Shown in pieces: positions 8,638 to 13,776 of a stretch of 64,000 bases of DNA (its first letter is position 1; each line of letters begins with the position of its first letter). The notes under the pieces were generated by a model. It made no database searches, was not told where the DNA came from, and saw nothing but the letters and a program-made list of their open reading frames with translations. The DNA is from Camelus ferus (taxonomy: Eukaryota). A program made the translations under genes and the position numbers. The stretch spans positions 42,780,001-42,844,000 of the forward strand of contig NC_045699.1 in the NCBI RefSeq assembly GCF_009834535.1. Direction: 5' to 3'.

Positions 8638-11600
8638 CTACAGGTCACAAGTCTTGAGCAGAGATGTCCGAAATTCTGCAAGAAGGGTTTCACAGTCAGG
8701 GGGACGGATCCAGCCCAAACAAGTTTCCAGGTACAGGGGGAGAGACCTGAAAGCAAAAAGGGTGATGTATAAGGGAGGACTGGCAGAAAGTTGGGCAACC
8801 ATTCCATCCCTTTCATTTACCACCACCCCCAAAAGGCACAAGGATTCCAGGACACCAGCTGCCCCTCAGCCTCACCATGTAGCATTCTCCTGTGGCAACT
8901 CAGTTTGGGCCTCCAGCCTCCGCCAAAGAGCAGTGGCCTCATCCCTCCGATCCAGCCTCCTCAGAGTCCGAAGCAGGTGAAAGGAAGCATCTTGATTACC
9001 TGTAGCCCCACCCCAAAGTACAGTCTTAGAACTTGACACGGACTTAAACATCATTTTATAAAAGGGGAAACTGACGCCTAGAGCAAGGAAGTATCTTGTC
9101 TACGTGGAACCAGGGGTACATCACTCCCAACCATCTTATCCCTGGGCACTGCCTGCCCAGGACAAAGGGCTCAGCAGACCCTGCTCCTGATCAACACACT
9201 CTCAGCACTGCTATGATCTTTGTGTCTGAGAACATTGGGAAGACTAGAGAACTTCCGAGAGGCCTTCATACACAATTGTATATGCCTTGTATATGTCTGC
9301 ACACCTGGGTATAGCCCTACATATATACAGGAACAACCTCATTTACCCCTCCTGTCAAGGAACATCACTCTTCCCAGTCCCCAAGTACCTCCCCATGGCC
9401 CTCTGTCCTTAGGCACCTGTGCATAGCTAATGTTTTGCACATATACATACCTGGGCACACCTGCACACTGAGGAGGAAGTCCTGTAGAGCTCTGGTATCC
9501 TGGCCACTGGCCACCCATTCCAGTCCACGACTAATCAGGGCGGCTGCCCGAAGCTGCTGTAGTGCCACATCTGATGTACACCCCTGCTCACAACTAGAAG
9601 CAGGCCCTGGGGACCACTTCCAAGGTCAAAATGTGTTCCCAGCCACACTGTCACCAAAATCCCCAAGTCTCCTCTCCATTTTTTGTGTTCAGAGTCCCTT
9701 TCTCTTAAATCTCCTAGTGGGCTAGGACACATGGAAAGGGAACCGACATACACTACCACCGCAAAGGAAAACTGAAAGTCTAGATCACCTTGTTCTTTAT
9801 CCTTGGGTGTGGCCCGGAAGAGCAGCTCAAGGCACCTGAAGTGGGACACAAAGCAGGGGTAAAGAAGGGTCAACCTCAGAAACTCGGGTGAGTGGGTAAG
9901 AATGGAGCTCACCAACAACTCAGGTCCCAGTTAGAAAATTATCCCTCCACATTTCCCCTAGTGTCCTGGTTGGCTTCCTGGGCTCACCTGCTAAATTCAC
10001 TAATTGCCTCCTTTCGGGCCCCCAGTTGCACCCAAGCTTGGCCCTGAAGCAGGTAGGTGGCAGAGACCCAGGGTGAGCAGTGTGGTGACTCTCTGGCTCC
10101 TTTTCTGGCATCTTTCCACAGCCGGGGCCTCTTGGGAAGCAGAGATGACATGCGGCTAAGCAGCTCCTCACATATGGTTAAAGCATCCTGGGCTCGGCCT
10201 GCCTGGATCAGCGCTGCAGCCGCCTCCAAGAACACCTCAGGCACACAGGGCCCTGGGGGGCAAGGGGGTGGGGATAACTGGGGGGGGGGGGAGGATGCAG
10301 TATCTTGAAGAGACAGGAGCCACCACTCCCAATCTCTTCACCAGGCTTTGGTACCATGCAGAAACCACATACTGCTTGCTGCCCTGGACCTCCCTTGCTC
10401 TGGGAAACTTCCCAGTCTGGTCCCCCAGATTGGACAGACAGAACAGCAAAGAAAAAATCAGAAAAAAGCAGTCCTGCTCTACTCCAAACCAGACTCCAAC
10501 TCTCCCACCCCATTGCAGAGAAACTTGACATACCCACCTTTGGCTCTGAGACATCCAGCAACAGGGCCAGTAGGTCCAGGTAATGTTCTGCAGCATCCTC
10601 TGCCCTGAAGAGTCATTACTCATGAACCTCACCTTAGGCCATAGTAGGGCCCTCCAAGGGCTCTTAGCTAAGGGTCCTGGGGAGTAGGGAGGGTGGGGTC
10701 TTGGGACTCCAATATTGGCTAAGCATGGATCTACCCTACTTACAGACTGGATTTAAGAGGAGACTTTAGAGTTTTCAAGATTCAGAAAGTTATTGTCTGG
10801 GTGAAGAGTCCTTAGTTCGGGTCCAGCAGCAAGACAGGAGGCTGAGAGTGGAGACCCATGTCCTGCCCCTGACTCATCCATCCCAACTCACAAGAACAGA
10901 AGCAGAGTCACACCACAGGGGAGCCGTCAGAAGTGGAAAGAGGAGCTCAGGTGAGCAAGGTGGTACCTCACCTTCCTGTCTGTAGGCATCGGCTTGCTAG
11001 CAGGTACTTGGCCTGGCTCTGTGTGCCACAGTGAAGGGGTGAGGCTGGGTCAGGTCGTGGGAGTAGTAACTCTACCTCAATGAGAAGCTGGGGAGCTTCA
11101 GGGATATCAGAGACACTCAAAGCCTAAAAGGAACAAAAAGAAGAAAGTACACTCATAATCTTTGGGAACTATACTTTCTTCTACTTATTCCTCAGCTGGT
11201 CACCCCAACACAAGCATTCAGCAATCCCCATATCTTCACCTGGTATAGTTCCTTACCTCAACCAGCAGCTCCAGACTCTCAATCTCTGCTGCTGTGTTCC
11301 CCAGTTGCCTGATATAGCCTGGAGGCCTCCAGAAGCGGGGGACCCCAGGTTGATCCCCCTTTCAAGGCTGCAATCAAGTACAGCAGAGCTTTCTGTGGAC
11401 TGCCCTAAAGGGGTGAGAGGACAGAAGCCTCAGCTACCCTCACAAAGAAGAAAGCTGCCCGTAACACCCATAGTTTCCCCAGCCCATCATAGGACTCTCT
11501 TTACCATCTTACGAAGACAGGTCCCCAGAGCTGTGTACACCTGGACCAACACAGTCCTGTGGGCACAGACTTGAGGCCGCTTCATGCAGGCTGCTCAGTG

Positions 11601-13776
11601 CCCTGGGTAGGCTCCCTGTGATCAGCTCTTGGAGGCCTGTGGGCAATCAGGGTGTGAGCTTAGAGATGCTAATAGGGCAAAAGGAATGATGGGGAAGAAG
11701 AGCAGAGAGAAGCTCCTTAGCTGAAAGGTATATGACAGAAAAGACATGAGCCTGGAGGACCCCTTAAGACAGGGAGTGGGAGGAAAGGATGAGTCAGATT
11801 GCTAGCTGACCTTGGCGATGGGCAAATGCTGTCAGAAGGACATCCCGCAAGCTCCGGGCATCCTGCAGGGTCAATGGAGCATCTGACTCCTCAGCTGGGG
11901 GCCTCCAAGTTTTCAGAAGCAGGAGGAGATCCTCAGAGGCCCTGCACTGGGGAAAGAAGGATGGTCAGAGGCTCCAAGCCTGTAACTAGCCCTTCTCCTG
12001 TCTCAGTCTACCCTGGCTAGACTTTGAACCCAAGGGTCCTCCTGGTTCCTGTCCCCTCAACTGTGATTGATAGCTGTGGGCAGAAATCCTGGGGCAGTTA
12101 TGACCTATTCTAATGAGTCTTCTCACACAGGATAAGACCACGCACGAGGACATGGAGCAGGGACCATGTCTGGGTTACTGATGAAAACACTGAGGACTGG
12201 AGGTGACCTCAGCAACGTCATGAGAGCCTTAATTCTACCCAAGATAATTAAGCTACTTTAAAAAAAAAAAAAAAATGCTCCCAAGAGAATCTCTCCAATA
12301 AGGGACCAAGCAGAGCAAGGTCACTTAAGAGTCCCTGAGAGAACCTGGGTCTTCTGAACACCAACCCAGCAGCCTTCCCAGCACATAATGATGATACTGC
12401 AGCTGAGAGGTGTGGGAGGAAGGAAGAGACCCTTAGATCCAGGTCACTACCCGAGTTACCTGGCTGCCATTCAGGGTCTGCAGCAGAAAGGTCAGGTCCC
12501 CAAGATGGTTAGTGCTCAGCCAAAGGGCAGCCTGCAGGCCAGCCAGGTGGTGAAGGGCAGGGAGCACCTCCGGCAGAAGGGAGGAAACATGGAGGACGAA
12601 GTCCCACAGCTCCCTGAGCCCATGTTCCAGCCTGGCTTCCAGCTGCTCCTGGGTCTCCAGCACTGTAGAATGTACACACACATACAGCTGAGGTGGGGCC
12701 TCATTCCTGGCTTTCCTTTTCTGCAGGAGCCCAAAAGCGCTCCTGGTCTGAGGAGCACATGGAGGATCAGAGAAGGGCATCTCCATGAAGGTGACTGAGT
12801 ATGTTGCACCTCCTATCACCCTTGCAAGGACTTAAAGCCAGACTGAGGCTGGCAGAGACATGGAAGGCAATCTGTGGCCCTCACCTCTTTCTAGGCCCCG
12901 TTGGATATCCTGTGCCAGGTCTTCAGTGAAACCCTGGGCCAGGCTTGCCCTCAGGGTAATGAAGTTGCAGATGACACTCAGTTCCAAAGGGAGAACAGAA
13001 ACAGCTGCAGGGAGCCCTGGAGCGACAAATGCTGGTCTTACAGACCACTCTCCGTGAAAGATTCCCTGAATAAGATCCCAACTCAGAGATCACAACACCC
13101 AACCAAAATGGCCTCAATAAAGAACCCACCCTTTGGACAGAGAGTTTGGAAAAGGCAGAAAGTTTTCCAAATAGACAATCCAAGAAACCACTTTTTCATA
13201 TGTGTGTGTGTAAGAAGGAGAGAGATTTACCTGTACAAAGATGACTCCACCGCAGTCCTGTCTGTGCCTTAAACAGGACCCCTTGCCCCCCTGAGTAATC
13301 ACCTCAATCCAAGAAATGCAGAAAAGGAACTGCTCTCTGGCTGGGGGTGGGGGTGTGACCATTCTGGGGAGGACCCTACTTACCCTGCAGGCTATGGAGG
13401 AGTCCCCTGAGCCCTTCCAGTGCATCTTGAGCCAATTGCTGTCGCCTCAGAGACAGACCCAAGTCTTGAGCAACCTGCCAAATGTGTGGTGGGGTATCAC
13501 AGAAGATCAGTGCTTTCCTCTCCCCTTGCAGCTGTGGCAAGGGATGTCATTCTCCAGCCATTTCTGGCTCTTTGGGGGAGATCAAGCTCAGTCCCTCCCC
13601 ATCGGCGAGGGTAGAGCCACTGCATACCCTTTTTCTGGTATTTTGGGGTTGCAAACCGAAGGTCCCAGCAACCACATTACCTTGGCCTGTCGAACTAGCT
13701 GGTCATTCTTTTCCCTCCACAGGTCCAGGCAGCTGGTGGGTGGTGCTGAAGAGCCCAGAGGGGTCTTGTGAGCCAT
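8638..13776 (-). CDS. FANCG: Fanconi anemia group G protein (XRCC9), 14 exons; as assembled it has two +1 frameshifts (exons 6 and 7)
   Basis: Exons 13681-13776, 13384-13474, 12885-13016, 12460-12662, 11811-11946, 11505-11636, 11257-11404, 10972-11123, 10538-10604, 9988-10277, 9789-9835, 9451-9606, 8876-8999, 8638-8746, all GT-AG. Peptides [61 protein letters not shown] and [12 protein letters not shown] match FANCG. Exons 6 (132 nt) and 7 (148 nt) are each 1 nt longer than the frame allows; 626 aa if corrected. Confidence 0.96.

What the first reader, a model, noticed from the sequence alone, without database searches (positions are those of the whole stretch)
11505..11636. FANCG frameshift in exon 6 gives a premature stop (apparent null allele)
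Seen: exon 6 is 132 nt, while the phases of exons 5 and 7 require 131. The frame reads ...ASSLCP, then CCA CAGG ACT GTG TTG GTC CAG, where the [10 protein letters not shown] motif sits +1. Translation runs [16 protein letters not shown] to TAA at 11509-11511, a 261-aa product lacking most TPR repeats and a likely NMD target. Single-exon skipping does not restore the frame. Established: FANCG is an FA core-complex subunit, and its loss causes crosslink sensitivity and subfertility. Inference: all other exons and splice sites are intact, arguing for an artefact or a very recent allele rather than an old pseudogene.
Basis: partly seen in the sequence, partly recalled or inferred. Interest (0 to 1): 0.72.

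Follow-up and report, generated by a model that had tools for sequence, protein, structure and literature searches.

The report
False FANCG frameshift from assembly error
The apparent FANCG frameshift in this wild Bactrian camel genome is one extra letter written into the assembly at a variable site; independent camel sequence data lack it, so the gene is intact and the finding is ordinary.

Summary
On the minus strand, FANCG exon 6 (11636-11505) is 132 nt where the phases of exons 5 and 7 require 131. The frame then reaches TAA at 11511-11509 after 261 codons.

The frameshift is not biological. The window is 100% identical to Camelus ferus assembly GCA_009834535.1, and RefSeq names its FANCG product "LOW QUALITY PROTEIN". 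Contigs from three independent camel DNA runs cover the site with no other difference and lack exactly one letter at 11558. They read CCA CGG ACT, which gives a 131-nt exon in frame.

The C. bactrianus, C. dromedarius and alpaca assemblies also have 131 nt there, reading CAG, CGG and CGG.

Over 23.8 kb the window differs from C. bactrianus by 1 substitution, 5 one-base insertions and 1 poly-T deletion. Three of the insertions sit on known dromedary/Bactrian SNPs and carry both alleles side by side. The chance of that is about 5e-8. The most likely cause is a consensus or polishing error at heterozygous sites.

A second false +1 lies in exon 7 at 11310, already noted by this scan (s1-149688). 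Unchecked notes elsewhere in this genome list further one-base insertion frameshifts.

Interest is low.

The parts
8638..13776 (-). FANCG gene, ATG to stop, 14 exons. Flanked by PIGO upstream and VCP downstream, all on the same strand.
   Evidence: tblastn with marmot FANCG P0005. Splice model. Neighbouring genes in L005. The window is identical to C. ferus GCA_009834535.1.
11505..11636 (-). FANCG exon 6 as assembled: 132 nt, with 131 nt expected.
   Evidence: The exon is 131 nt in C. bactrianus, C. dromedarius and V. pacos and in contigs of runs X1, X3 and X11.
11557..11558 (-). The site of the spurious base. The assembly reads C-A-G-G where real sequences read CGG (Arg246) or CAG (Gln246), so both alleles of a CpG transition SNP stand in tandem.
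   Evidence: alignment: dromedary and alpaca have G, C. bactrianus has A, and the window has AG; the letter at 11558 is left out in all three DNA runs, with no other letter differing.
11509..11511 (-). TAA reached only in the artefactual frame. In the true frame these letters fall within ...CGT AAG ATG (R K M).
11257..11404 (-). FANCG exon 7 as assembled: 148 nt with 147 nt expected. There is a second spurious base (A) at 11310, so TATC-A-GGC stands where the other three assemblies read TATCGGC.
Evidence: In one search no run held more than 0.50 of the 4 sampled words of 11265-11355.
10291..10291 (-). One-base insertion in intron 9, next to the poly-C tract before exon 10. The site is a T/C SNP between the C. 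bactrianus and dromedary assemblies, and the window has TC.
9664..9664 (-). One-base insertion in intron 11. The site is a G/A SNP (dromedary and alpaca G, C. bactrianus A), and the window has GA.
20290..20290 (-). One-base insertion (A splitting a CpG) in a PIGO intron, with the same signature.

Best explanation
The frameshift is a base-level error of the Camelus ferus reference assembly GCA_009834535.1, not a mutation. The real exon 6 is 131 nt and FANCG is an intact 626-aa gene.

The error sits on a real CpG transition polymorphism, CGG (Arg246) versus CAG (Gln246). The consensus carries both alleles one after the other (C-A-G-G). This most likely arose when a collapsed diploid consensus or a polishing step treated a heterozygous SNP as an insertion. 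That mechanism is inferred.

Shown here: the extra letter is absent from independent data, and the same error pattern recurs at four more sites nearby, including exon 7. I put the probability that the frameshift is an artefact of some kind at about 0.95. The 0.75 given below is for this specific mechanism.
For: 1. Window 6638-15776 is identical to C. ferus GCA_009834535.1 CM020771.1. The source names this product 'LOW QUALITY PROTEIN: Fanconi anemia group G protein [Camelus ferus]', while the dromedary, C. bactrianus and alpaca proteins carry normal names.

2. In one search, runs X3 and X11 (organism B) and X1 (organism A) each have one contig across 11530-11585. The contigs are 3.1, 8.5 and 4.0 kb long, at depths 9, 78 and 10. 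Each shows 0 other letters and exactly one letter left out at 11558.

3. In one search, all 14 DNA runs hold 0.91 of the sampled words of 11200-12000 and none holds more. The two sites would remove 62 of 771 words, about 8%.

4. In some searches the window differs from C. bactrianus by 1 substitution, 5 one-base insertions and 1 poly-T deletion over 23.8 kb. Real divergence would be mostly substitutions.

5. Three of the 5 insertions lie exactly on dromedary/Bactrian SNPs and equal both alleles in tandem. The chance of this per random insertion is 0.00175, and for 3 or more of 5 it is 5e-8. The other two insertions are an A splitting a CpG.

6. Collapsed assemblies of heterozygous genomes are reported to acquire indel errors that cause apparent frameshifts (PMC8445201).
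Against: - Heterozygosity of the assembled animal at 11557/8 was not shown. I could not identify its reads, and both read-laying runs were used.
- Logan contigs drop minor variants, so they show that the 131-nt form is present. They do not prove that a 132-nt allele is absent from every animal.
- The RNA run X16 gave no contig on the stretch, so there is no direct cDNA evidence.
- The exon 7 and PIGO-intron insertions have no known second allele in the assemblies I compared.
- The assembly paper was not held, so the pipeline step that made the error is not identified.
Confidence: 0.75

Rival explanations
1. It is an assembly artefact of a different kind: an ordinary uncorrected long-read insertion error or homopolymer miscount (CAG read as CAGG), unrelated to heterozygosity. 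The consequence is the same, because the gene is intact.
For: Insertion-only bias over 23.8 kb. Against the C. bactrianus allele CAG, the exon 6 change is a G to GG length error. 10291 lies in a poly-C run. Residual long-read indels are a recognised problem in camel assemblies (PMC7468183).
Against: Three of 5 insertions fall exactly on known SNPs and carry the other allele, with a chance of about 5e-8. At 11310 and 20290 the inserted A is not part of any homopolymer.
Confidence: 0.2
2. It is a real, private frameshift allele, probably heterozygous, carried by the sequenced wild camel. That would be a genuine FANCG null allele.
For: The base is in the deposited assembly. Contigs cannot exclude a rare allele (tool caveat).
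Against: This would require two independent +1 insertions 247 nt apart in one gene, plus three more within 24 kb, on a haplotype that has only 1 substitution against C. bactrianus. No run among 14 DNA holders contains the site-spanning words. Three runs show the 131-nt form. The tandem-SNP signature is not expected of real insertions.
Confidence: 0.04
3. FANCG is a pseudogene or has been lost in wild Bactrian camels as a species.
For: None beyond the assembled frameshifts.
Against: Organism B runs X3 and X11 carry the in-frame exon. There are 0 substitutions against C. bactrianus over the 9.1-kb locus. All 26 splice sites are GT-AG, and the remaining 1881 nt form one open frame identical to camel orthologues except at residues 246 and 295.
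Confidence: 0.01

Closest known systems
Apparent frameshifts from indel errors in collapsed or long-read genome assemblies (e.g. Cosentino et al. 2021, PMC8445201; RefSeq 'LOW QUALITY PROTEIN' models)
   Same: A one-base insertion in the consensus breaks an otherwise perfect ORF. It is absent from independent reads and is associated with allelic variation. The annotator has already flagged the product.
   Different: The signature here is unusually clean: both alleles of a transition SNP are written in tandem, often as C-A-G at a CpG, and it recurs 5 times in 24 kb. I did not find this particular pattern described for this assembly.
Pathogenic FANCG truncating alleles (Fanconi anaemia complementation group G)
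   Same: If it were real, a frameshift in exon 6 truncating the protein at 261 aa would remove most of the TPR region. By general knowledge of FANCG, it would be expected to act as a null.
   Different: The change is not present in the animals' DNA as sampled, so nothing biological follows from it.
Natural Arg/Gln variation at FANCG residues 246 and 295
   Same: The underlying site is a real CGG/CAG difference. Residue 246 is R in dromedary, alpaca and most mammals, and Q in the C. bactrianus assemblies. Residue 295 is R in camelids, marmot and orca, and Q in human, hippo and deer.
   Different: These are ordinary, tolerated substitutions and are not disabling.

Membership tests
FANCG orthologue (functional gene) | Sequence homology to FANCG along the whole length | tested here: met
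   PDB 7KZP chain G matches the exon 6 peptide. The three frame segments are 100% identical to camel FANCG apart from the two break points and one isoform difference at the start of exon 10. Precomputed Pfam hits are FANCG_N and TPR.
FANCG orthologue (functional gene) | Conserved exon-intron structure and synteny (PIGO-FANCG-VCP) | tested here: met
   14 exons, all introns GT-AG. Neighbours are PIGO-like and VCP (CDC48/AAA) genes.
FANCG orthologue (functional gene) | Uninterrupted reading frame in the organism's DNA | tested here: met
   At the exon 6 site, contigs of X1, X3 and X11 give a 131-nt exon. At the exon 7 site the evidence is indirect only: three other assemblies, and word shares.
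Null allele or unitary pseudogene | The disabling change is present in independent reads or individuals | tested here: not met
   One search shows the letter left out in all three DNA runs. In one search no run holds more than 0.91 of the words.
Null allele or unitary pseudogene | Signs of relaxed constraint (further substitutions, lost splice sites) | tested here: not met
   0 substitutions against C. bactrianus in 9.1 kb and all splice sites intact.
Assembly consensus indel artefact at a heterozygous site | The indel is absent from other data of the same or sister species, and errors are biased to one-base insertions | tested here: met
Assembly consensus indel artefact at a heterozygous site | The inserted base equals the alternative allele of a SNP at that position | tested here: met
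   Met at 11557/8, 9664 and 10291. Chance is 5e-8. At 11310 and 20290 no second allele is known.
Assembly consensus indel artefact at a heterozygous site | The assembled individual is heterozygous at the site | not testable with these tools
Contigs collapse heterozygous sites anyway.

The most novel reading that the evidence does not exclude
The sequenced wild Bactrian camel, a member of a critically endangered species, really carries a heterozygous FANCG frameshift haplotype that the assembler happened to pick.
Probability: 0.03. Interest if true: 0.4.

Novelty: not a real feature. Interest (0 to 1): 0.07.

Why it matters
The result has little biological importance. FANCG in wild Bactrian camels is intact, so there is no Fanconi-pathway loss to explain.

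Its practical value is for this scan and for users of GCA_009834535.1 / GCF_009834535.1. In this region one-base insertions occur about once per 5 kb. They often read as C-A-G at a CpG, or more generally as both SNP alleles in tandem. They create false frameshifts in coding exons.

Other one-base-insertion frameshifts noted in this genome (KLK11, AKT1, WDR55, PRMT8, FAM83H; unchecked notes) should be treated as the same artefact until reads say otherwise.

Tried and rejected
- **First read-laying run.** I then used a 56-nt stretch beside the site, which worked.
- **RNA run.** X16 gave no contig on that stretch, so there is no cDNA evidence.
- **Contig look-up.** Looking up contigs for P0164 found nothing. 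Other cluster members did give loci.
- **Assembly paper.** The paper (doi 10.1111/1755-0998.13141) is not held. Papers citing the assembly say nothing about base-level errors.
- **Rescue by splicing, rejected.** The two halves of exon 6 are both conserved but lie in different frames, so no shift of donor or acceptor can restore both. Skipping exon 6 also leaves exon 7 out of frame, because exon 5 ends in phase 1 and exon 7 starts in phase 0.
- **The two +1 changes cancelling, rejected.** Together they sum to +2.
- **Pseudogene decay, rejected.** There are 0 substitutions against C. bactrianus.
- **PIGO insertion.** I checked whether the insertion at 20290 breaks a PIGO exon. It is intronic.

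Full report
**What is there.** The stretch lies in FANCG on the minus strand. The translated exon matches human FANCG in the solved FA core complex, 7KZP chain G. A search with exon 10 returned full-length mammalian FANCG proteins.

Guided by marmot FANCG (P0005), I built a 14-exon model in which every intron is GT-AG. Exon 5 (11946-11811) ends in phase 1. Exon 6 runs 11636-11505 and is 132 nt. Exon 7 begins at 11404 with GGC AGT CCA CAG (G S P Q) and must start in phase 0. Exon 6 therefore needs to be 131 nt.

As assembled, the frame reads ...[22 protein letters not shown] and stops at TAA 11511-11509 after 261 codons. The conserved [16 protein letters not shown] stretch sits in the +1 frame. 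Exon 7 (11404-11257) also has an extra base, at 11310, and is 148 nt instead of 147. The assembled CDS is 1883 nt, that is 1881 + 2.

**Where the window comes from.** The three frame segments are identical to camel FANCG. The 90% cluster of that protein holds normal FANCG entries for Camelus dromedarius, C. bactrianus and Vicugna pacos. It also holds one entry named 'LOW QUALITY PROTEIN: Fanconi anemia group G protein [Camelus ferus]'.

I fetched the genomic loci of these proteins. Window 6638-15776 is identical over all 9139 letters to C. ferus GCA_009834535.1, CM020771.1.

**Comparison with other assemblies.** Across the 9.1-kb locus the window has 0 substitutions against C. bactrianus GCA_048773025.1. 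It has four one-base insertions. At each of them C. bactrianus, dromedary and alpaca all lack a letter that the window has:

| Site | Location | Window | Other assemblies |
|---|---|---|---|
| 11557/8 | exon 6 | CAC-AG-GAC | dromedary and alpaca CAC-G-GAC; C. bactrianus CAC-A-GAC |
| 11310 | exon 7 | TATC-A-GGC | all three TATCGGC |
| 10291 | intron 9 | TC | C. bactrianus and alpaca T; dromedary C |
| 9664 | intron 11 | GA | dromedary and alpaca G; C. bactrianus A |

Extending the comparison to 23.8 kb gave 1 substitution, 5 one-base insertions and 1 deletion in a poly-T run. The fifth insertion, at 20290, is an A splitting a CpG in a PIGO intron.

Three of the five insertions fall exactly on one of the 64 SNPs that separate the C. 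bactrianus and dromedary sequences, and each reproduces both alleles side by side. By simulation, a random insertion does this with probability 0.00175. Three or more out of five has probability about 5e-8.

**Independent sequence data.** Fourteen DNA runs of three coded organisms all hold 0.91 of the sampled 31-letter words of 11200-12000, and none holds more. Words spanning the two exonic sites make up 62 of 771, about 8%. That matches the missing share.

The second used 56 nt around the site. Runs X3 and X11 (organism B) and X1 (organism A) each have a single contig across the stretch. The contigs are 3.1, 8.5 and 4.0 kb long, at depths 9, 78 and 10. Each shows no other letter differing and exactly one letter left out, at 11558.

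On the coding strand this gives CCA CGG ACT GTG, so exon 6 is 131 nt and in frame with Arg at residue 246. The RNA run X16 gave nothing on the stretch, so I have no cDNA evidence.

For the exon 7 site I could only run a word search on 91 nt. There were 4 sampled words, and no run among 24 held more than half. This is weak but consistent.

**Interpretation.** The frameshift is an error of the assembly, not of the animal. The excess of one-base insertions over substitutions is not what real divergence looks like. The tandem-allele signature points to heterozygous SNPs of the sequenced animal being entered as insertions during consensus or polishing.

Collapsed assemblies of heterozygous genomes are known to acquire indel errors that produce apparent frameshifts (PMC8445201). 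Residual long-read indels have also been discussed for camel assemblies (PMC7468183). The step of the pipeline responsible is inferred, not shown, because the assembly paper was not available. I also could not show that the assembled animal is heterozygous at the site.

A plainer alternative is an ordinary long-read insertion error. It has the same consequence for the gene. It does not explain the coincidence with SNPs.

A real private frameshift allele is very unlikely. It would need five independent insertions, two of them in adjacent exons, on a haplotype with a single substitution.

**What is real underneath.** Residue 246 is truly variable among camels. It is CGG (Arg) in dromedary, alpaca and the three runs, and CAG (Gln) in both C. 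bactrianus protein models. Residue 295 is Arg in camelids and Gln in human, hippo and deer. RefSeq's corrected C. ferus protein chose R246 and Q295. These are ordinary substitutions.

**Verdict.** The sequence is as described, but the null-allele reading fails. The feature is an assembly artefact that the annotator had already flagged.

Five other unchecked notes from this genome describe one-base insertion frameshifts, one of them in AKT1. This fits a genome-wide problem and is the only reason the result is worth keeping in mind.

Noticed in passing
window 11257-11404 (site 11310): A second false +1 lies in FANCG exon 7. An A is inserted into a CpG (TATC-A-GGC), and the C. bactrianus, dromedary and alpaca assemblies all lack it. 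It is the same kind of artefact as the exon 6 site.
   Followed up: partly
window 20290, 10291, 9664: Three further one-base insertions relative to all other camelid assemblies lie in a PIGO intron, FANCG intron 9 and FANCG intron 11. Two coincide with dromedary/Bactrian SNPs and carry both alleles in tandem. In this 24-kb region the rate is about one insertion per 5 kb.
   Followed up: yes
window 3151-3153 (minus strand, VCP): The VCP codon noted elsewhere as R95H (CAC, in [12 protein letters not shown]) is identical in the C. ferus, C. bactrianus and C. dromedarius assemblies. It is therefore not an error private to this assembly. I did not examine it further.
   Followed up: partly
window 10277-10245 (start of FANCG exon 10): The older C. 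bactrianus isoform X3 protein (P0164) reads [11 protein letters not shown] where the window and other models read [11 protein letters not shown]. The two stretches are the same length. This is probably a different predicted splice or exon choice next to the 12-13 C run before the acceptor.
   Followed up: no
window 4849 and 23534: These are the only other differences from C. bactrianus in 23.8 kb. One is an A/T substitution next to a poly-A/(TA)n tract, and the other is a one-base shorter poly-T run.
   Followed up: no
same genome, other windows: Unchecked first-reader notes list one-base insertion frameshifts in KLK11, AKT1, WDR55, PRMT8 and FAM83H. They are probably the same assembly artefact.
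   Followed up: no
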